IMG/VR virus record: IMGVR_UViG_3300020810_001156
Coordinates: 1 to 64,000 of that record
Strand: one strand, 5' to 3'
Length of the DNA stretch: 64,000 bases
In this document: in pieces, positions 20,180-33,928 of the stretch
Layout of the letters: each line of letters begins with the position of its first letter
How positions within the stretch are numbered: the first letter of the stretch is position 1
Position numbers and translations under genes: made by a program
Notes under the pieces: model-generated
Databases searched by the model: none
Seen by the model: the letters and a program-made list of their open reading frames with translations, nothing else
What the model was told of the DNA's origin: nothing

Positions 20180-22900
20180 TTAGAATCTATAAGTTAAACT
20201 TGCGTTCCAAGTTCTACCAAATCCGAACCATACTGAGTTTCTAACATCAACACCATTCCATGTAGTTGAACTAGCATCTGCATGAATGTTAGAGTTAGAT
20301 TCTGCAATATAAACAGCATCGAATAAGTTGTTGATATTAGCTCTCGCAGTAAATTTACCAAACTTACCAGTCAATCCTAAATCAACTAAACCATACGATG
20401 GTAATTTCATCGCACCTAAGTTATCAGGTTGTGTAAACTCCGAATCAGTAATAGAGTAGTCAGCGTATAATCCATCTACAAATCTATAATCTACATCAAC
20501 ATTAAATCTTTTACCTAACTTCTGGTCTACTCCTAAAACAGCTACGAATTGTGCAGCATCACCAACTTTAGCATCTTTAAGGTAAAGAGTACCTGTTCCG
20601 ATTGATTGTTGGTTATCATCAAATAATTCTGCTTCGAAATCTTTAGTATATCTCCAATCACCGATTGATAACATACCTCTGAATCTCGTTGCGTTTGATA
20701 ATTGATACTTACCTTCAAATTCGATACCATTATGTACTACATCGATATCTCTGAATTGTGCAAATCCATCTACACCTTGTTGGTTAGATAAACTTCTACT
20801 AACAAATCTATTACCCCAAGTTGTTGTGTAAGCGTTAATGTTAAACGATACATCTGAACCAATAAAACCATAACCCAATTCAAATGAACGAATTTCTTCG
20901 TTTTGTAAATCTGGATTAATTTCATTAGCAAAGTTAGGGAATACTGCATCAAACTGAGGTTGTCTTGAAATTACACCTGCGTTAAAGAACACATTTGATT
21001 TCTCATCGATATTGTAGTTAGCACCACCCTTTACATATCCACCACCTTGGTTTTGAACATCTGATTCTGGGTTACCTGGTTGGTCAAAATAATCGATTCT
21101 TTGGAATGCTTGGTTAGATAAACCTGCTTGTACTACTGCAGTTAATTTATCTCCCTGATATTCTACTAAACCATTAAGACCTTGCCATCCAACTTTACCA
21201 ACATTGTAGTAATCAATCTTCGGACCGTTTAGACCTGTATTCTGAAAAGGATTTGCTTCAACTAAAGTATTGATGATTTGACCGTTAGAGTTTTTGTTAC
21301 CCGTTGAGTAATAACCATCTAATCCCATTAAATCATTAAGAACTCTATAATGATAACCAGTATAGCTTCTTAAATCAACACCAATAGATGTTTTGAATTT
21401 ACCAAATTGTCCTTCTAAGTTTGAGATACCACCAACCCAGTTGTGTGAGTTCATAGATGCTCTTCTTACCAATACTGTTCTATTTACATTAGAATCTCTG
21501 AATCCATTCGAACCAATAAGTTGTCCTTGGAATGCTGAGATATCACCTGTATATCCTTCAGTAGTTGATTGGTTAGCTGCAACGATTGCATCGAAATCGA
21601 TGAATCCATTTGCATCTCTTGAACCTCTACCATTTTCTAAGTAGTGTTCTGTAAGGTCTTTTCTGAAAGGTAAGATATCAGTTGCAGCTGCACGATAGTT
21701 GTTACCACGAGGACCTGTACCACCACCTCTACCAGCAGAACCATATAATGATGTTGCTAATTTAAGGTTATCTGAAATGTTCCAATCCCAGTTGAAAGTT
21801 GCTAATGGTTTGTTGTAGAAGTTTCTTCTTAAAGAATACTCTTCTCCATTTAGTGTACCACCATTAGAATTCCATCTCTGGTCAATTCCTTCTTCACCAA
21901 AGTTTTGGTAATCTCTAATAGATACCCAAACATCTCTTTGATGGTGCCATTGACCTGCACCTAAGAATGAAAAGTTCAATTCATGGTCTGAACCTTCCGG
22001 TGCGTAACCAACTGCAGCGAAGTAAGTCCATCCTTCACCTGAAGTGTTGTAAACATATCCGTTACCAGCCCACTTAGATAATAAGAAAGATGATGCCCAT
22101 CCTTTATCATTCTTACCTGTGTTGTAAGAAACTCCTGTTTTGGTGTATCCATCGTTACCAACCATTTGAATTACTTTACCACCTTCAGTTTTCTGTGCGG
22201 CTTTAGTAAAAATGGAAACAGTTCCCCCAACTGAAGGAACTGCCAACTTAGATGCACCTAAACCTCTTTGGATTTGGATACCTGATGCTACATCGGTTAA
22301 ACCTTGCCAGTTACTCCAATATACCCATCCGTTCTCCATATCGTTAACGGGTTGTCCGTTAATAAGGAAAGATGTATTTCTTTGGTCAAATCCTCTAAGA
22401 GAGATTCTTGAATCACCATAACCACCACCTTGTTTAGTAGCATAAACCCCTGGAGTTTTATTCATAATTTCAGGGAATTCTTGGTTACCAACCTTTAGAG
22501 AAATCTCAGCTGGTGATATCGATGATACCGCTACTGGAGTTTCTCTTACTTTTGCTACATCAATTACCCCTGATGTAACCACCACTTCAGCTAACTGATT
22601 TAATGCAGTTGGTAAATTTACAATCATATCGTTCACAGCAACAACCTCAGTTGTTTGGAAACCAATAAAAGAAATTACTAAAGTGTTACCAGCGGATGCC
22701 CCAGAAATAGAAAAGAGACCATCAAAATCGGTTGTTGTACCATTTTGGGTCCCTTTGATTACTACCGTTGCGCCTGGTAGGGGTTCATTCGTTTCTGCAT
22801 CTACCACTGTTCCAGTGATTTGTGCGAAACCGGTCATTGAGGTGAAAACCATCAATAACCCAATCAAAAATTGCTTCATAATTGCTTGATTTTTGTTCAT
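20180..22900 (-). CDS. TonB-dependent outer-membrane receptor
   Basis: Signal peptide (FAQ), CarboxypepD-like domain (ITGTVVD..EPLPGATV), plug (SLRGF...INGQP), barrel ending ...SLTYRF. Confidence 0.9.
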   Translation of the reverse strand: MNKNQAIMKQFLIGLLMVFTSMTGFAQITGTVVDAETNEPLPGATVVIKGTQNGTTTDFDGLFSISGASAGNTLVISFIGFQTTEVVAVNDMIVNLPTALNQLAEVVVTSGVIDVAKVRETPVAVSSISPAEISLKVGNQEFPEIMNKTPGVYATKQGGGYGDSRISLRGFDQRNTSFLINGQPVNDMENGWVYWSNWQGLTDVASGIQIQRGLGASKLAVPSVGGTVSIFTKAAQKTEGGKVIQMVGNDGYTKTGVSYNTGKNDKGWASSFLLSKWAGNGYVYNTSGEGWTYFAAVGYAPEGSDHELNFSFLGAGQWHHQRDVWVSIRDYQNFGEEGIDQRWNSNGGTLNGEEYSLRRNFYNKPLATFNWDWNISDNLKLATSLYGSAGRGGGTGPRGNNYRAAATDILPFRKDLTEHYLENGRGSRDANGFIDFDAIVAANQSTTEGYTGDISAFQGQLIGSNGFRDSNVNRTVLVRRASMNSHNWVGGISNLEGQFGKFKTSIGVDLRSYTGYHYRVLNDLMGLDGYYSTGNKNSNGQIINTLVEANPFQNTGLNGPKIDYYNVGKVGWQGLNGLVEYQGDKLTAVVQAGLSNQAFQRIDYFDQPGNPESDVQNQGGGYVKGGANYNIDEKSNVFFNAGVISRQPQFDAVFPNFANEINPDLQNEEIRSFELGYGFIGSDVSFNINAYTTTWGNRFVSRSLSNQQGVDGFAQFRDIDVVHNGIEFEGKYQLSNATRFRGMLSIGDWRYTKDFEAELFDDNQQSIGTGTLYLKDAKVGDAAQFVAVLGVDQKLGKRFNVDVDYRFVDGLYADYSITDSEFTQPDNLGAMKLPSYGLVDLGLTGKFGKFTARANINNLFDAVYIAESNSNIHADASSTTWNGVDVRNSVWFGFGRTWNASLTYRF

Positions 22901-23149: not shown

Positions 23150-24529
23150 ATGTTAACATTACGAAATAATCAAATAGAACCTGTTAGAAAGGGTATTGAA
23201 TATTTTTCTGAAAATAAACCCGTTCCATCAATTATCGTAGCACCTACTGCTTTCGGTAAATCAATTGTTATTGCTCATATAGCAAAAGGTGTGGGAGAGA
23301 AGGTACTTGTTATTCAACCATCAAAAGAATTATTAGAACAAAACTATGAGAAGTTTACTAACTTAGGTGGTGAAGCAACTATCTATTCCGCTTCAATGGG
23401 TGAAAAAGAGATTGGTGATGTAACATATGCTACTATTGGTTCTATTGTTAATATAGCATATAAATTCAAAGAGTATGGAATATCTAAAGTAATCATCGAT
23501 GAGTGCGATAGGTTTCCCAGAGAACCAAATGGAATGTTAAGAAGATTCTTAAAGGGAGCTGGTATCATCCATACTTTAGGTCTAACTGCTACCCCTCTCA
23601 AACTTCAAACCAATATGGGTGAAGATGGTAAACCTTTCTCTAAGTTGGTTATGTTAACTAATCGTTCTAAGAAAGGTAACTTCTTTAAAAAGATTATTCA
23701 TGTTGCCCAAATTCAACAAATGGTTGAATCAAAGTTTTGGAGTAGATTAGAATATCAATCCTATGATTTCAATACTGGTGATTTGGTTTACAATACAACT
23801 GGTGCTGAGTATTCTAATTCATCTATAAAAAGAGCATATAAGAATCAAAAGATATCTTCTAAGATTGTAAAGAAGGTTGAAGAACTATACAATAGAAAAT
23901 CAATCTTAATAGCAGTTCCTTCAATCGATGAGGCTAAAGAATTAACTACAATGATTCCAAGTTGTAAAGCAGTTTACTCTGATATGCCAACTTCGGAAAG
24001 AAAAGAGATTATTGAAGATTTCAAAGCTGGTAGGTTAAGATGCATCGCTCAAGTTAATATCTTATCAGTTGGATTTGATTATCCAGAATTAGATTGTATC
24101 ATAACTGGTAGACCTACTGCTTCTTTGAGTTGGTGGTATCAATTTGTTGGTAGAGTTACTCGTATCCATCCAAACAAATCAGAAGGATTGGTTGTAGATT
24201 TCGTAGGAGCAGTTCCAAAGTTTGGAAAGGTTGAAGATATCTACTTCAAAGAAGATAAGGGAAGGTGGAGTATGTATGGTGAAGGAAAGAAACTACTAAC
24301 AGGTATCCCTATAAAAGAGATTGGTTTGCATATAGAAGGTGAACCATCACCATATGAAAAAGCCGCTGCATCACCATCAGTTAAGATGCCGTTTGGTAAA
24401 TATGCTGGTAGAGAGGTTAGAGAGATTCCTGCTCATTATAGAGAGTGGATGTTGACCAATTTTAATTGGACTCCATTTAACCAAAAGATTAAGGATGAAA
24501 TTCTAAGACTAAAATCTATTGGTATTTAA
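23150..24529 (+). CDS. SF2 DEAD/DEAH-like helicase (RadD/UvsW-like) with C-terminal DUF3820-like domain
   Basis: APTAFGKS, IIDECD, GLTATP, LSVGFD, QFVGRVTR; tail MPFGKY.G. Confidence 0.9.
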   Translation: MLTLRNNQIEPVRKGIEYFSENKPVPSIIVAPTAFGKSIVIAHIAKGVGEKVLVIQPSKELLEQNYEKFTNLGGEATIYSASMGEKEIGDVTYATIGSIVNIAYKFKEYGISKVIIDECDRFPREPNGMLRRFLKGAGIIHTLGLTATPLKLQTNMGEDGKPFSKLVMLTNRSKKGNFFKKIIHVAQIQQMVESKFWSRLEYQSYDFNTGDLVYNTTGAEYSNSSIKRAYKNQKISSKIVKKVEELYNRKSILIAVPSIDEAKELTTMIPSCKAVYSDMPTSERKEIIEDFKAGRLRCIAQVNILSVGFDYPELDCIITGRPTASLSWWYQFVGRVTRIHPNKSEGLVVDFVGAVPKFGKVEDIYFKEDKGRWSMYGEGKKLLTGIPIKEIGLHIEGEPSPYEKAAASPSVKMPFGKYAGREVREIPAHYREWMLTNFNWTPFNQKIKDEILRLKSIGI

Positions 24530-24537
24530 TACTTACT

Positions 24538-24547
24538 TATATTTATA
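24538..24547 (+). promoter_or_regulatory. putative phage late promoter heading the exported-protein operon
   Basis: TATATTTATA just after the helicase stop. Confidence 0.5.
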
Positions 24548-24695
24548 ACAAATACTCATTGTATAGTATCTAATACTCAACGAGTATAATCGTTATCTCA
24601 ATTAAGTTTATCGGAGGGTTCTCCTCTGGTGTTTTATAAATCGTTTTATTATTAAGTTATACAATTGGTTACTTTAACTATAAAGTAGGCATTTT

Positions 24696-25175
24696 ATGTA
24701 TGCGTTAAGATTTTTAGGAATTGTTTTATTCTTAATATTGGGTGTATCAAGTATATCCGCACAAGAAATAAAGGTAGGAGATGTTACAAACGAAATCCGA
24801 TTAGGACCTTTCGCTGGTAATGCAAATCTTGCTATGGGAGTTCGTAATATTACCGAAGAACTTCTTATGGATTTGGATTACGATTTATCCCCATACGCAG
24901 AAACACAAATTAATATAAGACTTGTATTCTTTGATGTAAAGAATATTGGTAAGAGTATTGGTGTATATCATAATAAGGTATCAGCAACTCAAATCATTGC
25001 AATAGGAGAATTACAAGTTGGTAAGAAAGTAAAGAAACGAGTTACTAAAAAAGGAGTGAGTAAAGAAATATCTAACTCCACTTTGGTGGTAGCATCAGAT
25101 GGTTCGTTTAATCAACAAACGGCATCAAGTGCTGTAAAAAAGGTTTTAGTAGAAATAATTAAAGATTTATTATGA
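24696..25175 (+). CDS. exported CsgG/TolB-N-like alpha/beta protein
   Basis: Signal peptide (SAQ); LAMGVRNITEELL helix and terminal S.AVKK.L helix resemble the CsgG fold. Confidence 0.5.
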   Translation: MYALRFLGIVLFLILGVSSISAQEIKVGDVTNEIRLGPFAGNANLAMGVRNITEELLMDLDYDLSPYAETQINIRLVFFDVKNIGKSIGVYHNKVSATQIIAIGELQVGKKVKKRVTKKGVSKEISNSTLVVASDGSFNQQTASSAVKKVLVEIIKDLL

Positions 25176-26848
25176 AAAAAATTTTAACATTATTAGTTAG
25201 TGTATTGTGTACACTAAGTGTCTTTGGACAATCTCGTATGGATTATTCGAGAGTAAATACAGTAACCCAAGTAGGGGATACTTTAATTGTAAAATATCAA
25301 TACTTTAAAGGAACTGATGTTAATGGTAATGATATGCCAGATGCGACACTTTATCAGTTTGATATACAACATAACAATAAGTTATTGGATGTTATTGAAA
25401 ATGATTGGCAACCAACATCTAACTCTTCACAAAAAGCAGTAAACACTTGGAATGGATATAAGTTTACTATTGATTCTGAAAAAGACCAAACTGATTTTGA
25501 TGGGCAATATCTAAGTTGGTTAAGTGGAGATGCTACCTATGGAACAAATGCTGATTGGTCAGTACAAAGGGTAACTTATCAAGATGTAACTTCATTGGAA
25601 AATGGTGATGAGATTATGAAGGTATCTTATAAGATTAAAGATAAGGCAAATTCAAACTATACTGATTATACTAATTTAATCAATGTGAATTGGGCAAACT
25701 ATAAAGAAGCAGATGGTACTCAGATTGATGTAACTGGTCAATCTAATATAGGGTTAACAGGTATTCAAGGTGGTGATGCTGGTAATGTTTCTATTTCAGT
25801 ATCATCGAATGTAATCACAAATAATATTGGTGATGGTGGTGATTTCTCTTATACAATTTATAACAAAGGTGAAAATACTAATCCAATAGCAAGTGGTAAC
25901 TTTGATGCTGCTGGTGATGCAACTGTAACTGGTTTGGAAAATGATGTTGAGTATGATTTATATGTTTCAATTGATTCATCTAAAGAGTATTTAGATAATG
26001 TAGTAACTGTATCTGATTTATCATTGGTGTTTGCAGAAGCAATAGGAGCAGGCGATTCTCCAAATGGTATTTCAACTACATTTGATTATTACATTCAAAG
26101 TATTTTAGCGAATGTTGTAGGTACTTCTATTCCAAATGGTGGTGATATAAACTTTGATGATTCGTATGAGATACTTGCTTATCTACAAGGTGTAACATCT
26201 ACCAATACAACATTCATTTCAAAAACAGGTGAAGTGTATAATGTAAGTGGTATCAAATCTACTTTTGGTGATGAAGTAAATGGTATAGCAACCGTTTCAC
26301 CAACATTCAAACCAACTGATAGTGATAAATCGTTCCAATTTGCTCATGCAATTTCTGGTGATGTAAACTTCTCACATGGATTTGAACCAACATCAACTAA
26401 TGCGGATATACCAACCTCAGCACAATCAACTACTACTCAAAGAAGTATGATGGCAAGGGGTGCAAAACTTAATCCTGAAACTGCTAATTTAGATTTAACA
26501 TCTGAATTAAAAGATGGTCAAGTAATCTTCACAATAGGTTCGGAGGTTGAGGAAATGATTGGTGCTCAGTTTAACATTGTTTACGATAGAACGAGATTAG
26601 TATTAGATGATGTAATATTTGATACTGGTAATACAATGACCAACTTCTCAAATCACATTGAAGAAAATGGAAAAATAAATATAGGTTCTTTTGACCAAAA
26701 CTTTGAGGCAACTGTTAAGACAGGTACTCCTTATAAGTTAATCTTTACACCAACCGTACAGTTACAAAACACATCAGGTTTAATTACTTTCAAAGTTAAT
26801 GAAGGTGTTAAAGCAGATGGTACACAAATTAAATTTATAATGGAGTAA
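25172..26848 (+). CDS. exported cohesin- and dockerin-like domain protein
   Basis: Signal peptide (FGQ); cohesin-like N-terminus (YQFDIQHN..LL) and C-terminus (GAQFNIVYD); dockerin-like VTVSD and GDVNFSH segments. Confidence 0.6.
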   Translation: MKKILTLLVSVLCTLSVFGQSRMDYSRVNTVTQVGDTLIVKYQYFKGTDVNGNDMPDATLYQFDIQHNNKLLDVIENDWQPTSNSSQKAVNTWNGYKFTIDSEKDQTDFDGQYLSWLSGDATYGTNADWSVQRVTYQDVTSLENGDEIMKVSYKIKDKANSNYTDYTNLINVNWANYKEADGTQIDVTGQSNIGLTGIQGGDAGNVSISVSSNVITNNIGDGGDFSYTIYNKGENTNPIASGNFDAAGDATVTGLENDVEYDLYVSIDSSKEYLDNVVTVSDLSLVFAEAIGAGDSPNGISTTFDYYIQSILANVVGTSIPNGGDINFDDSYEILAYLQGVTSTNTTFISKTGEVYNVSGIKSTFGDEVNGIATVSPTFKPTDSDKSFQFAHAISGDVNFSHGFEPTSTNADIPTSAQSTTTQRSMMARGAKLNPETANLDLTSELKDGQVIFTIGSEVEEMIGAQFNIVYDRTRLVLDDVIFDTGNTMTNFSNHIEENGKINIGSFDQNFEATVKTGTPYKLIFTPTVQLQNTSGLITFKVNEGVKADGTQIKFIME

Positions 26849-26850
26849 AT

Positions 26851-27228
26851 ATGAAAAAAGTATTAGTATTATTATCTTTGGTTTTATTAATGGGATGTGT
26901 TAAGGATGAAATCCTTTCTCCTATTGATAATACAGTAGAGGTTCCTGAATCATTGGTTATTGGTGATTTACAAGGTATTAAAGTAGAATCAACAATCGTA
27001 ACCGATGAAGTTAAGATGAATATCAAACTTCCTTATACGGGAACTTATAGAGTTAAAATTAGAGATATAGGAAAAGAACTTATATCTCAAGAAAAGTTAC
27101 AAGCAAACGAAGGAGATAATATTCTTAAAGTATATGTTTCTTCTTTATCAAACGATGGTTATACTTTAGAGTTGACCGATGATAATCACGATATCATAGG
27201 TATAACTTCAATCGTAGTAAACAACTAA
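26851..27228 (+). CDS. lipoprotein consisting of a T9SS C-terminal sorting domain-like Ig fold
   Basis: Lipobox LMGC then VKDE; IRDIGKELI...GDN.LKV.VSSL..GYTLEL resembles type A CTD. Confidence 0.6.
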   Translation: MKKVLVLLSLVLLMGCVKDEILSPIDNTVEVPESLVIGDLQGIKVESTIVTDEVKMNIKLPYTGTYRVKIRDIGKELISQEKLQANEGDNILKVYVSSLSNDGYTLELTDDNHDIIGITSIVVNN

Positions 27229-27238
27229 ATATAAAATT

Positions 27239-27541
27239 ATGAGTGAAGAAAAAGAAGTAGGGTTCTTCGGACAATTGAAAAATCAAATCATAACTGGTGC
27301 AGGGGTTATCCTAACTGGTTTGGGTACAATGTTTATGGATGAAGTAAAAACATTCATTGGTATTGGAGATGAAGAAGAAACCAAAACAGAACAAGTTCAA
27401 GTTGAACAAAAGCAAGAGGTCAATGTAAGTGGACCTGAAATCATTATCAATATTCCTGAACAAAAAACAGAAACTAAAACAATTATTAAAGAAGTTCCTG
27501 TTAAAGAAAAGAAGGAAAAAGAAGAAGAAATAGATTGGTAA
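27239..27541 (+). CDS. membrane-anchored protein with charged low-complexity tail
   Basis: One TM segment; KTIIKEVPVKEKKEKEEE. Confidence 0.75.
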   Translation: MSEEKEVGFFGQLKNQIITGAGVILTGLGTMFMDEVKTFIGIGDEEETKTEQVQVEQKQEVNVSGPEIIINIPEQKTETKTIIKEVPVKEKKEKEEEIDW

Positions 27542-27570
27542 TAAGTTATATATTGTTAATATTAAATTAA

Positions 27571-27807
27571 ATGATTATGTTAAAATTCTTTAGAAATTTT
27601 TGGGAACTAAACACTATGCCGATGGTGGATATGTGGAATGATGCCGAAACTGTTAATGAAAAAATAGTAGCAGTATTTTTTAGCATTTGGATTGCTATAT
27701 TGTTGGTATTGTTTTATGTAGGAATGACGGGATTATTATACGGATTAATATCAGGAGAAGCAGATGTAGCAAATGCAACATTTGGTATCTTTGATTATTG
27801 TTGTTAA
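27571..27807 (+). CDS. small membrane protein
   Basis: Long hydrophobic segment. Confidence 0.65.
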   Translation: MIMLKFFRNFWELNTMPMVDMWNDAETVNEKIVAVFFSIWIAILLVLFYVGMTGLLYGLISGEADVANATFGIFDYCC

Positions 27808-28008
27808 TTATGAAAAAAATAATTGATATATTGAGTAAGATTGATAGTTGGGTATATAATCAACTATTAAATTTATACCCTAATCTTACAAAACATATGA
27901 GGGAAAAATAATGGGATTATTAGATGTGTTTATAATAACATCTGCAATCGTTATAGGTATGTCCGTTGTAATCGGACAATTAATGAAAATATTTGATAAG
28001 GAAGAATA

Positions 28009-28725
28009 ATGAAAAAATTATTACTATTGTTGGTATGTGTATTTTTAACACAAACCACATTTGCGCAAGTTGGAAGTATTAAAGCAGAAGAATATGTTGC
28101 TGAATTCGAAAAGAAAAAATCAATTGATGATGTTTCGGATTATGATGGTGATATGTTGCCTGTTGCACTACTCGATGTAGGTATCTCAGATGCTCTCTAC
28201 GAAACTTATCCTGAATTAAGGGATGGTAGAGTGGGTTTAGGACTTACAAACATTGTAATCGAATATTTGGATTGGACAAATAGATTTGAATTTGTTGAAG
28301 AAAAATCTGCAATCAAAGATAGAATGAAATCACAATGGGTTGCTTCTCGTAAAGGTGTATCTGAAAATAAAGTTTATGGTATGGGTAAGATTACTCTTGC
28401 TGAATACTTTGTAACTATTGAGATATACGATTTCTCAGTATCGGAAGATGAAGTACTTTCACTTAAAGAAGGTTCTAAACAAACTCAAACAACTCGTTTA
28501 GGATTACAAGTAAGATTTACCGATGCTGAAACTGGTAGATACTTGGTAGGTTCTGGTTTAGGAGATGCTAAGACTGTTAAAACTCAAGAAGGTTTAATTG
28601 GTTTAGATGTAGATGAAATCGCATTTAGAGAATCAGGTATCGGAGTTGCAACTCGTAAAGCATTAGAAACAGCTTCAGCAAGAATTGTGGCAAGAATGAT
28701 ACGAAAAGGAATCTTCCCAAACTAA
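28009..28725 (+). CDS. csgG: CsgG-family (curli assembly/transport) protein
   Basis: Signal peptide; RFEFVEEK, AEYFVTIEIYDF, LGLQVRFTDAETG...GSG.G, G.ATRKALETA motifs. Confidence 0.7.
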   Translation: MKKLLLLLVCVFLTQTTFAQVGSIKAEEYVAEFEKKKSIDDVSDYDGDMLPVALLDVGISDALYETYPELRDGRVGLGLTNIVIEYLDWTNRFEFVEEKSAIKDRMKSQWVASRKGVSENKVYGMGKITLAEYFVTIEIYDFSVSEDEVLSLKEGSKQTQTTRLGLQVRFTDAETGRYLVGSGLGDAKTVKTQEGLIGLDVDEIAFRESGIGVATRKALETASARIVARMIRKGIFPN

Positions 28726-28728
28726 TGG

Positions 28729-30339
28729 ATGAAAAAACTACTATCGATACTATTTTTTATATTCGTAACACAAGTTAGTTACGGACAGACATTTACACAA
28801 ACCTTTGTAGATAGATGTACTGGTGAAGTACAAGTAGTAACTGCCAACTTTCAAACGGGTTCGGCAGTTGTTTCATTTTATAATAAAGTTAGAGTATTTA
28901 CATATCAAGAATATGTAAACGGAGAATTACACCAATGGTTGATGACTACTTATGCTTGGTGGCAAGCACTCTCCCCATGTTCAGCTGCACAAACTCAAAC
29001 TACCAACGCACAAAACGCAGCGAATAACGCCACAAATAACACTACAAACACAACCAATACAAATACCTCATCAACTAGCAACACATCTTCATCAAGTAGT
29101 AGTTCATCATCAAGTTCGTCTGGAGGGGATTCTGGTAGTTCATCTTCAAGTTCGTCAGGTGGTTCAGACGGTGGTGGTGATGGAAGTAGTTCATCAGGTG
29201 GTTCAGAAGGTAGTGGAGAAGGTAGTGGAGAAGGTAGTGGAGAAGGTTCTGGCGAAGGAAGTGGAGAAGGTAGTGGAGAAGGTAGTGGAGAAGGTGAAGG
29301 TTCTGGTGAAGGTTCCGGTGAAGGTGAAGGTGAAGGAGAAGGTAGTGGAGAGGGTGAAGGTGAAGGAGAAGGTTCTGGTGAAGGAGAAGGAGAAGGTTCT
29401 GGTGAAGGTGAAGGAGAAGGTGAAGAAGAGTCATCTGAAGAAAGTTCAGAGGAAGAATCAAGTGAAGAGGAATCATCAGAAGAATCGGAAGAAGAAAGTT
29501 CAGAAGAAGAATCCGAAGAAGAGAGTGAGGAGGAATCAGAAGAAGAAGAGAGTGAAGAAGAATCTGAGGAAGATGAGGAAGAATCTGATGAGGATGATGA
29601 AGAAGAATCCGAAGAAAGTGATGGTGAAGATGAAGAAGATGAGGAAGATGAAAAGGAAAAAAAGTTTATGCCTATTCAATTAAAGGCGGATATGATGGCT
29701 CAACAAGCTCTTACTTTGGATTATAATGCGGTTCTTAATATCGGTGCTTCTATGAGTTCTATTTTTGGTGATAGAAGTTATGGTGCTAATCTTATGATAT
29801 ATGATAATCTTAAACAAGCAAACATTTCACTTAACACATCAGGTGTTACTATGAATGATAATTACGAAGTAACATGGGTAGATGGTGTTTCGGTTTCTTA
29901 TATGAGAAACTATAAGATGAATGCTATATCAGCATCAGCAAGTAGAATGAAACCATTAGGTAAGTGGGGAACTGTTGGTGTGGGTATTAACTATTCTTAT
30001 ATGACGGGTAAAGACCAATTAGGGCAACAACTTCCTAAGTCTTGGATGTTAGGATATAATGTTGTTTATTCTAATATGATAAAAATAACTGATAGAATAA
30101 TGTATTCACCAGCATTGGTTGGAGTTAGTTCTCCATTATCATATACACAAATGCAAGAAACTGATATTGTAGATTTTTCTACAATCAATAAAGATTTAAT
30201 GGTTATAGTAGCAAACCCATTCACAATACAATTAACTAATAGATTTTCGTTCAATGTAGGGTGGACAGTTATAATGAGTACGAGTGAATATCTACCGATA
30301 TTAAACTCGTTTATGATAGGTTCTAAAATACCATTTTAA
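28729..30339 (+). CDS. exported protein: small N-domain, long S/G/E low-complexity stalk, C-terminal beta-barrel-like domain
   Basis: Signal peptide (YGQ); GSGE and EEES repeats; alternating beta strands ending in Phe. Confidence 0.8.
29206..29660 (+). repeat. coding low-complexity repeats (GSGE / GEGE / EEES)
   Basis: Tandem GAAGGTAGTGGA-type and GAAGAA-rich units. Confidence 0.9.
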
Positions 30340-30341
30340 TT

Positions 30342-30890
30342 ATGAATAAAAAAATAGAAATTTCTGTATGGTTACTTTGTTTATTAGTAATCGGATTTTG
30401 GTTTATTGGATATACTACACAATACCAAAGACCAGCTAAAATAGAATATGTAGAAGTAGTAAAAGAAGTAGAAGTAGTTGTTACTGATACAATCTATGTA
30501 GATAAAATCATAGAAGAAAAAATATATGTACCAAAATACATTACACAAATCGAAAGAGATACAATTAAAGTAGAAGTACCAGTAGAAGTAATTGTTGAAA
30601 AACAAATACCAATTACTAAAAAAGTATATGTGGATAAAGTAGTAGATAGACTTGTTGAAGTTCCCGTCAACGAGAAAAAACTATTTTTAGGGTTTGGTTA
30701 TCAATACGATTTTGAAAATTATTTTAGTGGAGCAAATATAAAGTTAATTCACAAAACACCTAAAGATAAAATGTTTAGTTTAGATGTTGGTTTCAGAAAT
30801 GATTTGTTAGATAAAGAAACTAATGTAGGAAGATTAAGACCTTACATTGGAGGTTCTATATATTTTAGAATTGATAATCCAAACAAATAG
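30342..30890 (+). CDS. membrane-anchored protein with V/E/K-rich repeats and C-terminal beta strands
   Basis: TM helix; KVEVPVEVIVEK and VDRLVEVPV repeats. Confidence 0.75.
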   Translation: MNKKIEISVWLLCLLVIGFWFIGYTTQYQRPAKIEYVEVVKEVEVVVTDTIYVDKIIEEKIYVPKYITQIERDTIKVEVPVEVIVEKQIPITKKVYVDKVVDRLVEVPVNEKKLFLGFGYQYDFENYFSGANIKLIHKTPKDKMFSLDVGFRNDLLDKETNVGRLRPYIGGSIYFRIDNPNK

Positions 30891-32920
30891 TGAAAAAACT
30901 TCTTTACATATTATTATTTTTACCCACTTTAGTTTTTGGACAAAGTGGTGAAGGATATGTAAATTACAAATCCTATAAAACTCACTATGGGAATGGTTAT
31001 AGTTCAACCTATAATGGATACACATATAGTGGATTAGCTGATAACGCAACCGAGTTACAAGCAATGTTAGATGTAAATCACCCTGGTACATCTTTAACAC
31101 ATGAAGGTGAAGCAGTAGCTAATTCAAGTGAAGGATTAAAAGGAGGTAGACCTTCCAGATGGGGGAATGATTTTTATGCCGTTTATCACTATGGTTGGTT
31201 TCAACCACAAGAAACAGGAACTTACAGATTTACCCTACAATCAGATGATGGTAGTGGTTTATGGATAGATGGAGACTTAAAACTATTTAGACCTTGTTGT
31301 GGTGCATCCTCTGTGGATGTTTCCTTAACATCAGGACAATGGTACTTCTTTGAAACAAAATGGCAAGAATATACAGGTGGTGATTATATGTACTTTATGT
31401 ACTCACCTCCAAGTAATGCTAATGTGTTTTATGTTGGTGACCAAACACAGTATCTTAAAGTAACTAATATAGAACCAGAAGAAGAACCAATAAGTCCTGA
31501 AGTAGATTTAGATTTAGAATTCCATTCTCAATTAGCACCAGAAGAATATAGATTCAGAGTTTACTATGATGGAACTTCTGCACAAGATGGAACTGAATGG
31601 TTGAATACATCTACAATGAACTCTTCTTATTATTTAGATGATGATGGTAGTAAGGATATTACTGATTATCTAAATTTAGTCAAAATGGCAGATGGTAAGA
31701 AGGCAACTACAACTGGTGGTTGGACGGAGTGGTGTGTGGTTTATGATTATGATACAACTAACAAACGATACAGGGTTGGTATTGATAAAAGAGAATTTCC
31801 AAGTGGATTTACTTTTACTGATTTGAAACAATTAAAGTTGTTTGATTTATGGGATGGTGAAATAACTTATATGTCAGATGATATCTATTGGGCAAATTAT
31901 TACATCTATACTGATACTCAATTTGATTTCACAAGTTCAACCTTTTCATCTTATATAAGAGATGCAAATGGATTCTATGGAATAAAAGCAGATTTCTCAT
32001 TTGAAGATGTTGAAATATACAAAGGACATAAAGTATCATTTATGAATCCATCTACCAATATAGAAGGATGGACAGCAGAAGAATTTATGGATGATTATAT
32101 TACAGTTGCAGATGTAGTTGCAGGATTTAACGAATTAGCTGGTGGTGGAATTAATGGTGGATTAAAAGGAGATTTGAATGGAGTCCAATTACAAAACTCA
32201 GATGTTAACCAAGATGGTGAATTTGATTTTCAAGATAGTCAAATAGGATTATCTTTTTTGACTGGTGGTGATACTCCGTTTGATGGAAGTTTATATGATA
32301 TAATGAGAATAGTTCCTAAATCAGAATATGATAATACTACAACTACTAATTGGAAAACACAAACAAATAAATCACCATCAACATCGTTTACGTTTAGTCT
32401 TATAGATACGATACAAACTTTAGAGTATAAGGTTTCTTTTATAGGTGATGTAAACCTTTCACATTCTGCTCCCCAAACAGGTACTTCACCCGCTACCCAA
32501 TCTACTATATCTTCAAGAATGATGAGTGTAAGAAATTCATCTACTCAAAACAATACTTCGTTAGAGGTTGATTTAGATATTGAAAAAACTGAAGAACATA
32601 TAATCATTACATTAGATTTGCCTGAGAATAATTTTAATCTAATTGGTTCTGAATTTAGAATTGGGTTTGATAATGAACGAGTAGAATATGATAAGTTAGA
32701 AACTAATACAATGATGAATAGCTTTGATGCTAAGAGGAGTTCTTATGTTAAGGTGGGTTCTATATCAACTGATGGTTCTCTAACCTTAAACAGCGGCGTT
32801 CAATATAAAATTTATTTTAAACCAATACAATCATTTGAATCAACATTAGGATTGGTATCGGTTAAGAAATCAGAAGTTGTTGATGTAAATGCTAATATAA
32901 TAAATGTAATTATAAAATGA
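30890..32920 (+). CDS. exported PA14-domain protein with dockerin- and cohesin-like domains
   Basis: Signal peptide (FGQ); GWFQPQETGTYRFTLQSDDGS.LWIDG (PA14); DVNQDGEFDFQD; GDVNLSH; C-terminal cohesin-like domain. Confidence 0.75.
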   Translation: MKKLLYILLFLPTLVFGQSGEGYVNYKSYKTHYGNGYSSTYNGYTYSGLADNATELQAMLDVNHPGTSLTHEGEAVANSSEGLKGGRPSRWGNDFYAVYHYGWFQPQETGTYRFTLQSDDGSGLWIDGDLKLFRPCCGASSVDVSLTSGQWYFFETKWQEYTGGDYMYFMYSPPSNANVFYVGDQTQYLKVTNIEPEEEPISPEVDLDLEFHSQLAPEEYRFRVYYDGTSAQDGTEWLNTSTMNSSYYLDDDGSKDITDYLNLVKMADGKKATTTGGWTEWCVVYDYDTTNKRYRVGIDKREFPSGFTFTDLKQLKLFDLWDGEITYMSDDIYWANYYIYTDTQFDFTSSTFSSYIRDANGFYGIKADFSFEDVEIYKGHKVSFMNPSTNIEGWTAEEFMDDYITVADVVAGFNELAGGGINGGLKGDLNGVQLQNSDVNQDGEFDFQDSQIGLSFLTGGDTPFDGSLYDIMRIVPKSEYDNTTTTNWKTQTNKSPSTSFTFSLIDTIQTLEYKVSFIGDVNLSHSAPQTGTSPATQSTISSRMMSVRNSSTQNNTSLEVDLDIEKTEEHIIITLDLPENNFNLIGSEFRIGFDNERVEYDKLETNTMMNSFDAKRSSYVKVGSISTDGSLTLNSGVQYKIYFKPIQSFESTLGLVSVKKSEVVDVNANIINVIIK

Positions 32921-33258
32921 GAAAGATATTATTATTTATATTATTAATTTTGGTATCTTGTCAACCTGATGAGTTAATGGTTGTTGAACCATATCCACAA
33001 TACGAAATGATATTTGAGGAATCAATATCTAAAGTGGTTGATGGACAAGAGTTCTCATTTGAGGTATCAACAACTGAAGAATATACGTTGATTATATCAC
33101 ACCAAAATAGTTCAGTAATATCAAAAGAATCATTCATGCCAACAATGGGATTGAATACTAAAATCCTTTATACAAAATCTTTACCTAAAGGAGAATTAAA
33201 CTTAATATTAATTTTATCTAAAGAAGAAATCCAAAAAACTACTATTATTATAGAATAA
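32917..33258 (+). CDS. lipoprotein with T9SS CTD-like Ig fold (paralog of 26851)
   Basis: Lipobox LVSC then QPDE; similar strand pattern ending KTTIIIE. Confidence 0.55.
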   Translation: MRKILLFILLILVSCQPDELMVVEPYPQYEMIFEESISKVVDGQEFSFEVSTTEEYTLIISHQNSSVISKESFMPTMGLNTKILYTKSLPKGELNLILILSKEEIQKTTIIIE

Positions 33259-33271: not shown

Positions 33272-33928
33272 ATGTTAGTATATGATTTCAAAAATGTGGG
33301 AAAGATTTATGGATTGACCAATAATGATTCGGTTGAACCAAAACATGCTGACCGTATTGCTGAAATTCCTAAATCTATTTTTTCTGGGTTTAAGTATGAG
33401 AGGTATAAAAATATGCCTCCATATAAAAACGAATCTATGAGAACAATGCAGGAATTAATTAGATTATCACAAATACCATCTAATGATGAATTTACTTTGA
33501 AGATGGATAAAGTGAAAGAATCTTTTAAAAATTTATGTGAAGAATTAGATATTGATTTCCCAAAAGAAATGGTAAAAGATTTAAAAGATGCTGCTAGTGG
33601 TGTGATATTAGATTTAAAATATCACTACAATAGACCGAGGCCTTACAAATTAGCACCTTTACTTAATATAGAATTAGATACTAACGAAATCGAAGATACA
33701 ACATCAGATTCACCATCTTATCCTTCTGGACACGCAGCTCAAGGTATTCTGATATCCAATTATTTAGCTTACAAAAATCCTTTACATAGAGGAAAGATTT
33801 TGAGGTTAGGTAGAGATATAGCAAAGAGTAGAGTTACTGCAAAAGTTCACTATCAATCGGATGTAGATTTTGGTTCAATGATTGGAAACGATATGTTCAA
33901 CTATTTAAAAGAAAACAAATTAATATAA
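33272..33928 (+). CDS. PAP2-superfamily phosphatase/haloperoxidase-like protein
   Basis: KYHYNRPRP, PSYPSGHA and SRV.AKVHY.SD motifs. Confidence 0.9.
   Translation: MLVYDFKNVGKIYGLTNNDSVEPKHADRIAEIPKSIFSGFKYERYKNMPPYKNESMRTMQELIRLSQIPSNDEFTLKMDKVKESFKNLCEELDIDFPKEMVKDLKDAASGVILDLKYHYNRPRPYKLAPLLNIELDTNEIEDTTSDSPSYPSGHAAQGILISNYLAYKNPLHRGKILRLGRDIAKSRVTAKVHYQSDVDFGSMIGNDMFNYLKENKLI

What the first reader, a model, noticed from the sequence alone, without database searches (positions are those of the whole stretch)
25172..27228. Duplicated scaffold + lipoprotein gene pair, each scaffold carrying both cohesin and dockerin
Seen: pairs 25172/26851 and 30890/32917 share the order TV(S/A)D helix, GDVN(F/L)SH, S/T-rich linker with SMM, C-terminal cohesin-like domain, then a CTD-like lipoprotein gene. 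Their N-termini differ (cohesin-like versus PA14). Inference: subunits with both binding partners could polymerise head-to-tail, with swappable functional heads.
Basis: partly seen in the sequence, partly recalled or inferred. Interest (0 to 1): 0.6.

Follow-up and report, generated by a model that had tools for sequence, protein, structure and literature searches.

The report
Phage cohesin-dockerin proteins with paired lipoproteins
A large marine phage of flavobacteria carries two related exported proteins, each with a dockerin-like module and a cohesin domain (the snap-together parts of bacterial cellulosomes), each followed by a related small lipoprotein gene, inside a conserved block of cell-envelope genes; cohesin-dockerin pairs have hardly been described in phages.

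Summary
The window is part of a 252.6-kb phage record.

- **Gene A** (25172-26848) folds as cohesin, a small beta-sandwich, a dockerin-like helical module, a beta region ending in GDVNFSH, an S/T linker and a second cohesin.
- **Gene B** (30890-32920) has a PA14 lectin head and a beta-rich region, then the same roughly 290-aa C-terminal module.
- **Cohesin folds** are strong: Z 13.7-14.1, with 49 of the top 50 PDB rows for A being cohesins.
- **The dockerin-like part** matches dockerins only at profile level. Its first calcium loop is degenerate in all 58 aligned family members. The second is canonical in B but not in A.
- **The two lipoproteins** look unrelated pairwise (E 7.4) but are paralogues through intermediates (hhalign E 2.6e-12).
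- **The roughly 10-gene cassette** is conserved in the diverged phage contigs long enough to show it. It was not found in GenBank phages or the cellular genomes sampled.
- **Docking model:** B's dockerin-like helices sit on B's C-terminal cohesin (ipSAE 0.75, best control 0.00). This pass may reflect memory of solved complexes.

Binding within one molecule is sterically possible, so head-to-tail polymerisation is neither shown nor favoured. Heads do vary (PA14, C-type lectin, LCCL, cohesin). I read this as a new phage variant of non-cellulosomal cohesin-dockerin systems, probably acting in the host envelope.

The parts
24609..24631 (+). Terminator-like hairpin between the helicase gene and the cassette; likely upstream boundary of the transcription unit
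   Evidence: 10-bp stem followed by a T run
24696..25175 (+). 159-aa protein with a signal peptide, the first gene of the cassette; overlaps the start of gene A
   Evidence: ORF and sequence. Homologues sit in the same position in 5 other phage contigs. No Pfam, PHROG or NCBIfam match.
25172..26848 (+). Gene A (P0001, 558 aa): signal peptide, N-terminal cohesin, beta-sandwich, dockerin-like module, beta region with GDVNFSH, S/T linker, C-terminal cohesin
   Evidence: AF2 model with pLDDT 86.6 and pTM 0.69; structure comparisons
25226..25774 (+). A, residues 19-201: N-terminal cohesin-fold domain
   Evidence: VIA-align Z 13.7, rmsd 2.3-2.5 A over 134 aa against 6kgc_A and 2vo8. No sequence similarity to the C-terminal cohesin.
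25775..25981 (+). A, residues 202-270: small beta-sandwich, placed like the X module that precedes type II dockerins
   Evidence: Secondary structure of the model. Residues 19-399 align with CipA CohI9-X-DocII chains 4fl4_L and 3kcp_A, but at high rmsd of 7.5-12.4 A.
25982..26197 (+). A, residues 271-342: dockerin-like helical module (TVSD helix at 279-282). Both loops are non-canonical in A.
   Evidence: Family profile A4 matches it at E 6.4e-24 at 25982-26200. That profile's top PDB hits are dockerins. Loop analysis.
26198..26377 (+). A, residues 343-402: small beta region ending in the family-conserved GDVNFSH (396-402; nt 26357-26377)
   Evidence: G and D are invariant and S, H, S at least 90% conserved across 58 family members. 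Function unexplained.
26378..26476 (+). A, residues 403-435: disordered S/T-rich linker
   Evidence: pLDDT below 50 at 416-431. Family linker length is 17-45 aa, median 29.5, with 31% S+T.
26477..26845 (+). A, residues 436-558: C-terminal cohesin-fold domain
   Evidence: Z 13.8, rmsd 2.2 A over 121 aa against 1aoh_A. Profile A5 against PDB: top 15 hits are all cohesins, best E 5.4e-6. PF00963 scores 17.8 bits, below the 24.1-bit cut-off.
26851..27228 (+). lipA (P0002, 125 aa): lipoprotein starting 2 nt after A's stop; mature part is a small beta-rich domain; residues +2 to +4 after the Cys are K-D-E
   Evidence: Lipobox LLMGC. Weak hits to DUF3244 (E 0.0017) and Por_Secre_tail (E 0.0036). Family counts. 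Paralogous to lipB.
27239..27541 (+). 100-aa protein with one predicted membrane helix, a charged tail and a conserved C-terminal D/K-W; cassette member
   Evidence: Sequence. Seven homologues in related contigs, all ending in W.
27571..27807 (+). 78-aa small membrane protein; cassette member
   Evidence: Sequence. Five-member family across contigs.
28009..28725 (+). 238-aa protein with a signal peptide; cassette member
   Evidence: Sequence. Five-member family across contigs. No family match.
28729..30339 (+). 536-aa outer-membrane protein: signal peptide, small two-Cys domain, about 230 aa of acidic S/G/E low complexity, and a C-terminal beta-barrel ending in F
   Evidence: Sequence. Atlas: residues 320-536 match beta-barrel porin-like models, and the nearest clusters are viral, TM 0.82-0.96.
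30342..30890 (+). 182-aa protein with an N-terminal membrane helix; cassette member directly upstream of B
   Evidence: Sequence. Three-member family across contigs.
30890..32920 (+). Gene B (P0003, 676 aa): signal peptide, PA14 head (18-200; nt 30941-31489), beta-rich middle (201-391), dockerin-like module (392-463; nt 32063-32278), beta region with GDVNLSH (519-525; nt 32444-32464), linker (526-555), C-terminal cohesin (556-676; nt 32555-32917)
   Evidence: AF2 model with pLDDT 81.8. PA14 Z 16.1 and cohesin Z 14.1. Pfam PA14 E 1.3e-5. Dockerin profile hit at 32078-32275, E 2.6e-21. Canonical loop DVNQDGEFDFQD.
32917..33258 (+). lipB (P0004, 113 aa): lipoprotein overlapping B's stop codon; residues +1 to +4 after the Cys are Q-P-D-E; paralogue of lipA
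   Evidence: Lipobox LVSC. hhalign of the lipA family against the lipB family: 97.6% probability, E 2.6e-12.
33272..33928 (+). PAP2-family phosphatase-like gene that follows lipB in four of the contigs
   Evidence: Pfam PAP2 E 5.7e-11. Synteny.

Best explanation
This is part of a conserved block of about ten genes in an uncultured jumbo myovirus that probably infects marine Flavobacteriales. The block encodes proteins sent into the host cell envelope.

**Components**
- Two paralogous Sec-exported modular proteins, A and B, share a C-terminal unit: a dockerin-like helical module, a small beta region, a flexible S/T linker and a cohesin domain.
- Their N-terminal heads differ. A has a cohesin plus a beta-sandwich. 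B has a PA14 lectin, and relatives have C-type lectin or LCCL heads.
- Each is followed, tightly coupled, by one of two paralogous small beta-sandwich lipoproteins.

**Proposed mechanism**
1. The two conserved helices of the dockerin-like module dock onto the flat face of a C-terminal cohesin.
2. Because the linker permits it, the default state is probably a closed intramolecular clasp. Exchange in trans, giving A-A, B-B or A-B chains, remains possible.
3. The cognate lipoprotein tethers the unit to the outer membrane.
4. The variable lectin heads bind glycans. A's unpaired N-terminal cohesin is free for another partner.

The net effect would be remodelling or coating of the infected cell's envelope, for example receptor masking or adhesion.

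**Shown:** the genes, the duplication, the folds, the conserved synteny, and restriction of the family to phage-like contigs in what was searched.

**Modelled only:** the contact between the dockerin-like module and the cohesin.

**Inferred:** export, lipoprotein tethering, glycan binding and the biological purpose.
For: **Phage context.** The window lies in a 252.6-kb virus record. It carries a helicase and a baseplate wedge gene. The nearest isolates by baseplate wedge are Microcystis phage Mel-JY01 (42.6%) and Flavobacterium phage immuto (38.6%).

**Host hint.** The phage's TonB-dependent receptor is 65-76% identical to receptors in marine Flavobacteriales genomes assembled from metagenomes (MAGs).

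**Folds.** There are three cohesin-fold domains at Z 13.7-14.1, and 49 of the top 50 PDB rows for A are cohesins.

**Profiles.** The cohesin profile's top 15 PDB hits are all cohesins, best E 5.4e-6. The dockerin-like profile's top hits are dockerins, best E 2.5e-4. Pfam Cohesin hits 34 of 58 family members and Dockerin_1 hits 15 of 58.

**Docking model.** ipSAE is 0.75 against a best control of 0.00. That mark was reached by 58 of 80 solved complexes and 2 of 110 mismatched pairs. Runs agree in at least 96% of contacts, and partner pLDDT is at least 66.
- The interface uses dockerin-like helix 1 (T405, V406, A407, F413) and helix 3 (L454, G459).
- On the cohesin it uses G586, E588, F612, G623, V664 and A668.
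- Many of these positions are 80-100% conserved in the family.

**Conservation.** The dockerin-like module and C-terminal cohesin are the best conserved parts of A-type proteins, at 46% and 49% against 36-38% elsewhere.

**Duplication of both genes.**

**Synteny.** The cassette is conserved in contigs with A or B at only 25-70% identity.

**Export signals.**
- Signal peptides are followed by a nearly invariant Gln.
- Lipoboxes are followed by acidic residues. By my own knowledge, this resembles the Bacteroidota lipoprotein export signal.

**Related viral clusters.** The nearest fold clusters are all viral, and some combine Por_Secre_tail, Cohesin and Dockerin_1. These look like cargo for host type IX secretion.

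**Transcription.** Contigs from four RNA libraries lie on A, lipA and the next gene. Some have no mismatches, and two bridge gene junctions.
Against: - Neither A nor B reaches a Pfam cohesin or dockerin threshold on its own.
- The first calcium loop is degenerate in all 58 aligned family members, and A's second loop is non-canonical. Calcium-dependent dockerin behaviour is therefore doubtful for A.
- The docking pass may come from the model's memory of solved cohesin-dockerin complexes, and it used my own alignments.
- I could not fold the dockerin-like module alone or inspect coordinates. Its fold rests on profile matches and predicted helices.
- A and B have no T9SS sorting domain, and the genome has none at E<=0.1. 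In a Bacteroidota host they may therefore stay in the periplasm rather than reach the surface.
- No direct evidence links the lipoproteins physically to A or B. In one relative (L007) the lipoprotein genes are not adjacent to the big genes.
- Contigs from RNA libraries do not prove transcription.
Confidence: 0.5

Rival explanations
1. The dockerin-like module of one subunit binds the C-terminal cohesin of the next, so A and/or B form open head-to-tail polymers that display their heads.
For: - The modelled contact between the dockerin-like module and the cohesin uses conserved residues.
- Both partners lie on one polypeptide in every one of the 128 family clusters.
- Only two dockerin-like modules and three cohesin folds exist in the whole genome. 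The partners must therefore be each other, or host proteins.
Against: - The 17-45-aa flexible linker allows binding in cis.
- Independent monomer models of short relatives superpose on A 278-558 and 307-558 at TM 0.68 and 0.66, rmsd 3.7 A. The same intramolecular arrangement is therefore predicted repeatedly.
- In cellulosomal scaffoldins, a cohesin and a dockerin on the same chain normally do not bind each other (established knowledge of type I and type II specificity).
- No oligomer model was run.
Confidence: 0.2
2. The cassette is a lysis-stage envelope apparatus, equivalent to a spanin or other outer-membrane disruptor for Bacteroidota hosts. Inner-membrane, periplasmic, lipoprotein and outer-membrane parts are joined through cohesin-dockerin contacts, and the lectin heads bind peptidoglycan.
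For: - Endolysin genes lie inside the cassette in relatives: Amidase_2 in L005 and GH19 with PG_binding_1 in L009.
- The cassette holds small membrane proteins, lipoproteins and a beta-barrel.
- A and B lack a surface-sorting domain, so they may be periplasmic.
Against: - In this window no endolysin lies within 24.7-34 kb.
- Swapping of lectin heads (PA14, C-type lectin, LCCL) and many close variants in metagenomes fit binding to variable external ligands better than binding to invariant peptidoglycan.
- There is no similarity to known spanins or holins.
Confidence: 0.1
3. This is an auxiliary nutrient-capture system. Lectin-headed proteins anchored by lipoproteins act as surface glycan-binding proteins that feed the phage-encoded SusC-like TonB-dependent receptor during a long jumbo-phage infection.
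For: - A TonB-dependent receptor with a CarboxypepD_reg domain lies 2 kb upstream on the opposite strand. It is also present in L003 and L008.
- It is 65-76% identical to Flavobacteriales receptors.
- The heads are carbohydrate-binding folds.
Against: - The receptor is not seen in the stretches fetched around the cassette in L005, L009 or L010.
- No SusD-like gene or glycoside hydrolase lies in the cassette.
- Surface exposure of A and B is unproven.
Confidence: 0.12
4. A and B are virion parts, such as fibres or decoration proteins, and the cohesin-dockerin contacts assemble them on the particle.
For: - Lectin and Ig-like domains are common on phage fibres.
- BFVD fold hits include tail and baseplate proteins at weak scores.
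Against: - Both have classic N-terminal signal peptides with a conserved cleavage-site Gln.
- Their neighbours are lipoproteins and an outer-membrane barrel.
- The structural gene block lies elsewhere, with the baseplate wedge at 55 kb.
- There are no PHROG structural matches.
Confidence: 0.03

Closest known systems
Cellulosomal scaffoldins and adaptor scaffoldins (C. thermocellum CipA CohI9-X-DocII; A. cellulolyticus ScaA/ScaB)
   Same: - Nine-stranded cohesin fold, Z 13-14.
- Cohesin and dockerin on one polypeptide.
- A's order of cohesin, beta-sandwich and dockerin-like module mirrors Coh-X-Doc: 4fl4_L and 3kcp_A align over residues 19-399.
- The modelled contact uses dockerin helices 1 and 3.
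   Different: - It is encoded by a phage whose likely host is Gram-negative Bacteroidota.
- No enzyme in the genome carries a dockerin.
- There is at most one canonical calcium loop.
- The dockerin-like module lies upstream of a C-terminal cohesin, joined by a flexible linker.
- The heads are lectins, not CBM3.
- Sequence similarity appears only at profile level.
Non-cellulosomal cohesin-dockerin systems (C. perfringens GH84C/GH33 toxin-complex modules 2w1n, 2jh2, 2vo8, 2o4e; A. fulgidus cohesin 2xdh)
   Same: - Cohesin folds used outside cellulose degradation. These entries are among the best structural matches, at Z 12.9-13.7.
- By my own knowledge, the A. fulgidus protein also carries both a cohesin and a dockerin.
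   Different: - Those are cellular proteins with two-loop dockerins.
- Here the family was found only on phage-like contigs.
- It is also paired with lipoprotein genes.
Viral 'Secretion system C-terminal sorting domain' protein clusters (ESM Atlas viral clusters; BFVD A0A6J5M064, uncultured Caudovirales phage)
   Same: - They are the nearest whole-protein fold matches: Foldseek E 5.5e-23 and TM 0.44-0.52.
- They are viral, of similar size, and carry Pfam Cohesin (60-69% of members) and Dockerin_1 (36%).
   Different: - Those carry a T9SS Por_Secre_tail sorting domain (72-98% of members).
- A and B have none and instead end in a cohesin.
- A weakly CTD-like domain sits on the separate downstream lipoprotein.
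- I could not fetch those sequences to align them.
T9SS C-terminal sorting domain (Por_Secre_tail) and DUF3244, compared with lipA/lipB
   Same: Small beta-sandwich of similar size. Por_Secre_tail hits 7 of 13 lipoproteins (best E 7.3e-5) and DUF3244 hits 6 of 13.
   Different: - The window's lipA scores below the curated cut-off, at 18 against 27 bits.
- It is a stand-alone lipidated protein, not the C-terminus of a cargo protein.
- A PDB profile search gives nothing.
PA14 lectin domains of adhesins (yeast Flo/Epa, Marinomonas MpIBP, RsgI anti-sigma sensors), compared with B's head
   Same: Fold Z 14-16 over residues 18-200. Pfam PA14 and GLEYA hits.
   Different: The carbohydrate-binding residues were not checked, and the ligand is unknown.
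Virus contig with dockerin domains and a signal-peptide protein, from anaerobic methane-oxidising archaea (ANME) enrichment cultures (PMC13452462)
   Same: Virus-encoded dockerin domains next to an exported protein. The authors suggest a role in cell-surface adhesion.
   Different: - It is an archaeal virus contig whose genes are closest to ANME-2 host genes.
- The paper does not mention cohesins (0 occurrences), reports no lipoprotein pairing, and proposes the role only as a hypothesis.

Membership tests
Cohesin (Pfam PF00963) | Nine-stranded flattened beta-sandwich (jelly-roll) fold | tested here: met
   A 19-201: Z 13.7. A 436-558: Z 13.8, rmsd 2.2 A over 121 aa. B 556-676: Z 14.1. Nine strands in the models. 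49 of the top 50 rows for A are cohesins.
Cohesin (Pfam PF00963) | Sequence match to the family model above the curated cut-off | tested here: not met
   No hit at E<=1 for A or B. The six-frame search gives 17.8 bits against a 24.1-bit cut-off at 26546-26797. At family level, 34 of 58 relatives hit at E<=1, best 8.3e-7, and the profile's top 15 PDB hits are all cohesins, best E 5.4e-6. I read this as a remote homologue, not a model-level member.
Cohesin (Pfam PF00963) | Binds a dockerin on one face of the sandwich | tested here: inconclusive
   Docking model only: ipSAE 0.75 against 0.00 for the best control. The pass may come from memory of solved complexes.
Dockerin (Pfam PF00404, type I/II/III) | Two tandem segments of about 22 residues, each an EF-hand-like calcium loop (D-x-D/N-x-D/N-G-x5-D/E) followed by a helix | tested here: not met
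   Loop 1 is never canonical in 58 family members: position 1 is P/T/A, position 3 is W/L, and only D5, T9 and D12 are kept. Loop 2 is canonical in 26 of 58, including B (DVNQDGEFDFQD), but not in A, which has a 5-aa insert.
Dockerin (Pfam PF00404, type I/II/III) | Sequence match to dockerin models or solved dockerins | tested here: inconclusive
   No Pfam hit for A or B. Fifteen of 58 relatives hit Dockerin_1, best E 9.3e-4. The family profile's top PDB hits are dockerins, E 2.5e-4 upward, mostly over the second loop and helix.
Dockerin (Pfam PF00404, type I/II/III) | Dockerin fold of the isolated module | not tested
   Both structure-prediction jobs went to the full-length proteins. The models show four helices at A 272-338 and B 396-457. 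The cohesin and PA14 domains filled the fold-search lists.
Cellulosome-type scaffoldin system | A set of dockerin-bearing enzymes that plug into the scaffold's cohesins | tested here: not met
   Only two dockerin-like modules exist in the 252.6-kb genome, both on A and B themselves. No glycoside hydrolase lies in the cassette.
T9SS type A sorting domain (Por_Secre_tail), for lipA/lipB | Score above the curated cut-off and location at the C-terminus of a secreted cargo protein | tested here: not met
   lipA scores 18 bits against a 27-bit cut-off. TIGR04183 gives E 0.069. The domain is the whole mature part of a stand-alone lipoprotein. Seven of 13 relatives give weak hits.
Bacterial lipoprotein | Signal peptide ending in a lipobox with an invariant Cys | tested here: met
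   LLMGC in lipA and LVSC in lipB. The Cys is invariant in 13 aligned relatives.
PA14 domain (PF07691), for B's head | Pfam match above the cut-off, and the PA14 beta-barrel fold | tested here: met
   25.5 bits against a 24-bit cut-off. Z 14-16 against PA14 structures over residues 18-200.

The most novel reading that the evidence does not exclude
A widespread clade of marine jumbo phages builds its own cohesin-dockerin assembly on or in the envelope of infected flavobacteria. Lipoprotein-tethered subunits would link through dockerin-like:cohesin contacts into chains or a coat. Their interchangeable lectin heads would mask phage receptors or glue infected cells to glycan-rich particles. This would be a viral, non-enzymatic counterpart of the cellulosome scaffold.
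Probability: 0.2. Interest if true: 0.8.

Novelty: new variant of a known kind. Interest (0 to 1): 0.6.

Why it matters
Cohesin-dockerin pairing is known almost entirely from the cellulosomes of Gram-positive anaerobes, plus a few cellular oddities. In this window the same parts sit on exported proteins of an abundant, uncultured phage lineage from marine and salt-marsh samples. The word-index searches returned 1,455 hits for gene A and 237 for gene B across metagenomes, and related phage contigs reach 279 kb.

If the modelled contact is real, phages use a modular snap-together system to change their host's envelope during infection. The swappable lectin heads would then point to an arms race over surface glycans.

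That would bear on three things:
- How superinfection, adsorption to debris, or particle attachment are controlled in flavobacteria that degrade algal blooms.
- How proteins without a type IX sorting signal are anchored in Bacteroidota envelopes.
- New orthogonal cohesin-dockerin pairs for protein engineering.

If the contact is only an intramolecular clasp, the finding is still a new, phage-restricted domain architecture with a co-duplicated lipoprotein partner.

Tried and rejected
**Searches that found nothing or too little**
- Megablast and tblastn of the region, A, and B's module against 50,697 GenBank phage records gave no match.
- PHROGs and NCBIfam gave nothing for A, B, lipA or lipB.
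- phmmer of A and B against PDB sequences gave nothing for cohesin or dockerin; only the family profiles did (then 29, 46, 47).
- The lipoprotein profile against PDB gave nothing.
- The third word-index search, with the lipoprotein profile, returned 736 unnamed relatives with no Pfam record.

- With A alone it found only a second assembly of the same phage, L003.
- 'relatives' is not available for a virus record, and 'of' needs a G handle.

**Cellular genomes**
- A pattern scan of 185,579 species genomes with the A-type cohesin alignment found no relative.
- Five flavobacterial genomes had no match.
- A sample of 401 genomes of the same class gave only six weak partial cohesin-like hits in very large proteins, E 6.6e-5 to 4e-4. 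The family was not found in those searched, which does not prove absence.

**Ideas tested and dropped**
- That the upstream 159-aa and 238-aa exported proteins are also a duplicated pair: no similarity.
- That A's two cohesins are an internal duplication: no sequence similarity.
- That the phage uses T9SS sorting domains: none at E<=0.1.
- That 'SMM' is a motif: the linker is not conserved.

- Docking of each lipoprotein against the C-terminal module.
- Docking of the dockerin-like modules against A's N-terminal cohesin.
- A two-copy model.

- Read laying was given 4,251 letters.
- No other genetic code was used.

Full report
**1. What the sequence is.**
The window is the first 64 kb of a 252,603-bp IMG/VR virus record, with about 32% GC. 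Nearly all genes lie on one strand. It carries a phage-type DNA helicase (phrog_16, E 2e-65) and a baseplate wedge gene. The nearest isolates by baseplate wedge are Microcystis phage Mel-JY01 (42.6%) and Flavobacterium phage vB_FspM_immuto (38.6%). So this is an uncultured jumbo myovirus.

A second assembly, L003, is a 107-kb contig carrying an identical copy of gene A and the same run of ORFs, TonB-dependent receptor included. The receptor (20180-22900, minus strand) has CarboxypepD_reg and Plug domains. It is 65-76% identical to receptors in marine Flavobacteriales genomes assembled from metagenomes (MAGs): Polaribacter, Flavobacteriaceae and Cryomorphaceae. That points to a marine Flavobacteriales host. 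DNA runs holding the region come from salt-marsh and marine metagenomes, and one relative is a Tara Oceans scaffold.

**2. Check of the observation.**
- A runs 25172-26848 (558 aa).
- lipA runs 26851-27228 (125 aa, lipobox LLMGC).
- B runs 30890-32920 (676 aa, GTG start).
- lipB runs 32917-33258 (113 aa, lipobox LVSC).

The TV(S/A)D and GDVN(F/L)SH motifs are present in both large proteins. A and B align by BLASTP at E 5e-15 over their last 190 residues. An exhaustive HMMER scan with A 270-558 found 128 clusters at 50% identity. All complete members carry the whole roughly 290-aa unit at the C-terminus, behind N-termini of different lengths, giving proteins of 500-880 aa.

The 58-sequence alignment A3 shows these conserved elements:
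- (L)D-x-V-V-T-V-S-D-V;
- a D-V-N-x-D-G loop followed by D-S-Y-x-L-L-x-H-x-x-G;
- G-D-V-N-x-S-H-S;
- a variable S/T linker;
- a conserved C-terminal domain.

'SMM' is not conserved.

**3. Folds.**
AlphaFold2 on a 48-sequence alignment gave a model of A with pLDDT 86.6 and pTM 0.69. A 36-sequence alignment gave B at pLDDT 81.8 and pTM 0.60.

For A, Foldseek's best PDB matches are mostly cohesins, at probability 1.0. VIA-align resolves two cohesin domains:
- residues 19-201, Z 13.7, rmsd 2.3-2.5 A over 134 aa;
- residues 436-558, Z 13.8, rmsd 2.2 A over 121 aa.

For B, residues 18-200 are PA14 (Z 14-16) and residues 556-676 are a cohesin (Z 14.1). Between these domains, A has a small beta-sandwich (202-270), four helices (272-338), a small beta region ending in GDVNFSH, and a disordered linker. 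A's residues 19-399 align, at high rmsd, with the CipA CohI9-X-DocII chain, so the domain order resembles Coh-X-Doc.

**4. Sequence-level membership.**
On their own, A and B hit no cohesin or dockerin model. PF00963 reaches 17.8 bits against a 24.1-bit cut-off. Family profiles do better:
- The C-terminal domain profile's top 15 PDB hits are all cohesins, best 3l8q_A at E 5.4e-6.
- The helical-module profile's top hits are dockerins, best 3ul4_B at E 2.5e-4, and 5m2s_B is matched across both helices.
- Among the 58 members scanned, 34 hit Pfam Cohesin and 15 hit Dockerin_1.
- Language-model features of A 425-558 also point to cohesin clusters, score 0.91.

The dockerin-like module is atypical. 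Its first loop is never a calcium loop: only D5, T9 and D12 are conserved, and positions 1 and 3 are hydrophobic or small. The second loop is canonical in 26 of 58 members, including B (DVNQDGEFDFQD). In A's clade it is broken by a 5-residue insert. I therefore call it dockerin-like, not a dockerin.

**5. The lipoproteins.**
lipA and lipB are not similar pairwise (E 7.4). I fetched relatives from six other contigs and clustered all cassette proteins. The two lipoprotein groups join into one family, with cross-group BLAST reaching 1.9e-10. hhalign between the two sub-alignments gives 97.6% probability and E 2.6e-12 over 112 columns, signal peptide included. So both genes of the pair were duplicated, long ago.

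Seven of 13 lipoproteins weakly hit Por_Secre_tail (best E 7.3e-5) and six hit DUF3244; the window's lipA scores 18 bits against the 27-bit cut-off.

After the lipidated Cys, most of the lipoproteins have K/Q/P followed by acidic residues, for example VKDE and QPDE. By my own knowledge of Bacteroidota lipoprotein export signals, this suggests surface exposure. That is an inference.

**6. Context.**
The pair belongs to a conserved cassette. Its order is:
1. an exported protein of about 155 aa;
2. A;
3. lipA;
4. in some relatives, an endolysin;
5. a membrane protein of about 100 aa ending in D/K-W;
6. one or two small membrane proteins;
7. an exported protein of about 235 aa;
8. an outer-membrane protein with a long acidic low-complexity stretch and a C-terminal barrel;
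9. a membrane protein of about 180 aa;
10. B;
11. lipB;
12. a PAP2-like gene.

The barrel's nearest models are viral. In L007 the order is shuffled: A and B are adjacent, and lipB and lipA are adjacent further on. The set is therefore conserved more strictly than the adjacency.

A terminator-like hairpin at 24609-24631 precedes the cassette. B-type heads vary: 13 of 36 are PA14, 10 GLEYA, 2 C-type lectin and 1 LCCL. Atlas clusters show the same heads.

The genome holds only two dockerin-like modules, three cohesin folds and these two lipoproteins. It has no T9SS sorting domain at E<=0.1.

**7. Distribution.**
- The word-index searches returned 1,455 hits for A, 237 for B and 736 for the lipoproteins. 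All listed hits are unnamed, and some lie on contigs up to 279 kb.
- No GenBank phage matched.
- A pattern scan of 185,579 species genomes found none.
- A sample of 401 genomes of the same class gave only weak partial hits.
- The nearest fold clusters are all viral. Several combine Por_Secre_tail (72-98% of members) with Cohesin and Dockerin_1. The best BFVD match is an uncultured Caudovirales protein named for a secretion-system sorting domain, E 5.5e-23.

Related phage proteins thus appear to be cargo for the host's type IX secretion system. The family here lacks that domain and has a weakly similar domain on a separate lipoprotein.

**8. Binding test.**
One docking job paired B's C-terminal cohesin (555-676) with B's dockerin-like-plus-beta region (392-529), using my own alignments. 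The score was ipSAE 0.75 against a best control of 0.00. That mark was reached by 58 of 80 solved complexes and 2 of 110 mismatched pairs. Runs agreed in at least 96% of contacts, and partner pLDDT was at least 66.

The interface uses the TVAD helix (T405-N414) and the helix after the calcium loop (S450, L454, L457-G460). These are the two helices that canonical dockerins use. On the cohesin it uses residues that are largely conserved in the family: G586, E588, F612, G623, V664 and A668. Interface positions on the dockerin-like side have lower entropy than the rest (p 0.005). On the cohesin side they do not (p 0.40).

The tool warns that such a pass may reflect memory of solved cohesin-dockerin complexes. 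It shows likeness, not binding.

**9. Cis or trans.**
The linker is 17-45 aa, median 29.5, with 31% S+T. Atlas models of short relatives (289 and 248 aa) superpose on A 278-558 and 307-558 at TM 0.68 and 0.66, rmsd 3.7 A. This means independent predictors put the dockerin-like/beta part and the cohesin in the same relative place within one chain. A closed intramolecular form is therefore sterically possible and would compete with polymerisation. I had no further job to fold two copies. I rate strict head-to-tail polymerisation at about 0.2.

**10. Expression.**
Contigs from four metatranscriptomic libraries lie on the 159-aa gene, A, lipA and the following genes. Some pieces have no mismatches. 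Two pieces bridge gene junctions: X18 at 26611-27254 crosses the A/lipA junction, and X17 at 26822-27399 runs from the end of A through lipA into the next gene. This is compatible with transcription, possibly co-transcription. It is not proof, because such libraries can contain DNA and contigs do not show transcripts.

**11. Literature.**
Full-text searches for cohesin, dockerin and phage found no description of phage-encoded cohesin-dockerin proteins. One paper reports dockerin domains beside a signal-peptide protein on a virus contig from enrichment cultures of anaerobic methane-oxidising archaea (ANME), and suggests a cell-adhesion role (PMC13452462). Automatic annotations of viral clusters with Cohesin and Dockerin_1 do exist. 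The parts have therefore been flagged by machines, but as far as I could search they have not been studied.

**12. Verdict.**
The domain reading is largely right, with an atypical dockerin. Swappable heads are confirmed. Polymerisation remains an open and less likely option.

The best reading is a phage-specific envelope cassette. Its two co-duplicated pairs, each a dockerin-like-plus-cohesin protein and a lipoprotein, would place lectin or cohesin heads in or on the infected cell's envelope. Location, partners and purpose are inferred.

Noticed in passing
window 20180-22900 (-): The phage carries a full-length SusC-like TonB-dependent receptor (906 aa, with CarboxypepD_reg, Plug and barrel). 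It is 65-76% identical to receptors of marine Flavobacteriales MAGs, and is also present in a second assembly (L003) and in a Tara relative (L008). It is a likely host-derived auxiliary gene and a host clue.
   Followed up: partly
window 28729-30339 (+): A 536-aa outer-membrane protein has about 230 residues of extreme acidic S/G/E low complexity between a small two-Cys domain and a C-terminal barrel. The barrel's nearest predicted structures are viral clusters. The ORFs listed at 28952-29683 (+) and 29075-29476 (-) are probably by-products of this repeat.
   Followed up: partly
window 26357-26377 and 32444-32464: GDVNxSHS is the most conserved motif of the family (G and D invariant; S, H, S at least 90%). 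It is not at the modelled cohesin interface. It resembles positions 1, 3 and 5 of a calcium loop without its helix. Its function is unexplained.
   Followed up: partly
window 27239-27541 (+); homologues in L004, L005, L007-L010: A 100-aa membrane protein with one predicted helix and a charged tail always ends in D/K-W. It keeps its place after lipA. It could be a holin-like or spanin-like protein, or a ligand for another cassette member.
   Followed up: no
L005 9172-9660; L009 5479-6318: In two relatives an endolysin gene sits inside the cassette: Amidase_2 in L005, and GH19 with PG_binding_1 in L009. In this window none lies between 24.7 and 34 kb.
   Followed up: no
L007 4344-10572: In one diverged relative the order is shuffled. 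The A-type and B-type genes are adjacent, and the two lipoprotein genes are adjacent about 1.2 kb downstream. B's head there carries LCCL instead of PA14.
   Followed up: partly
window 33272-33928 (+): A PAP2 / acid-phosphatase-like gene without an obvious signal peptide follows lipB here and in three relatives (L008, L010, L011).
   Followed up: no
window 24500-28750: Contigs from four metatranscriptomic libraries (salt-marsh and 'freshwater' labels) cover much of this stretch. Several differ at many third-codon-like positions, which points to co-occurring strains of the phage.
   Followed up: partly
window 1-64000: ARAGORN found no tRNA or tmRNA gene in the window.
   Followed up: yes
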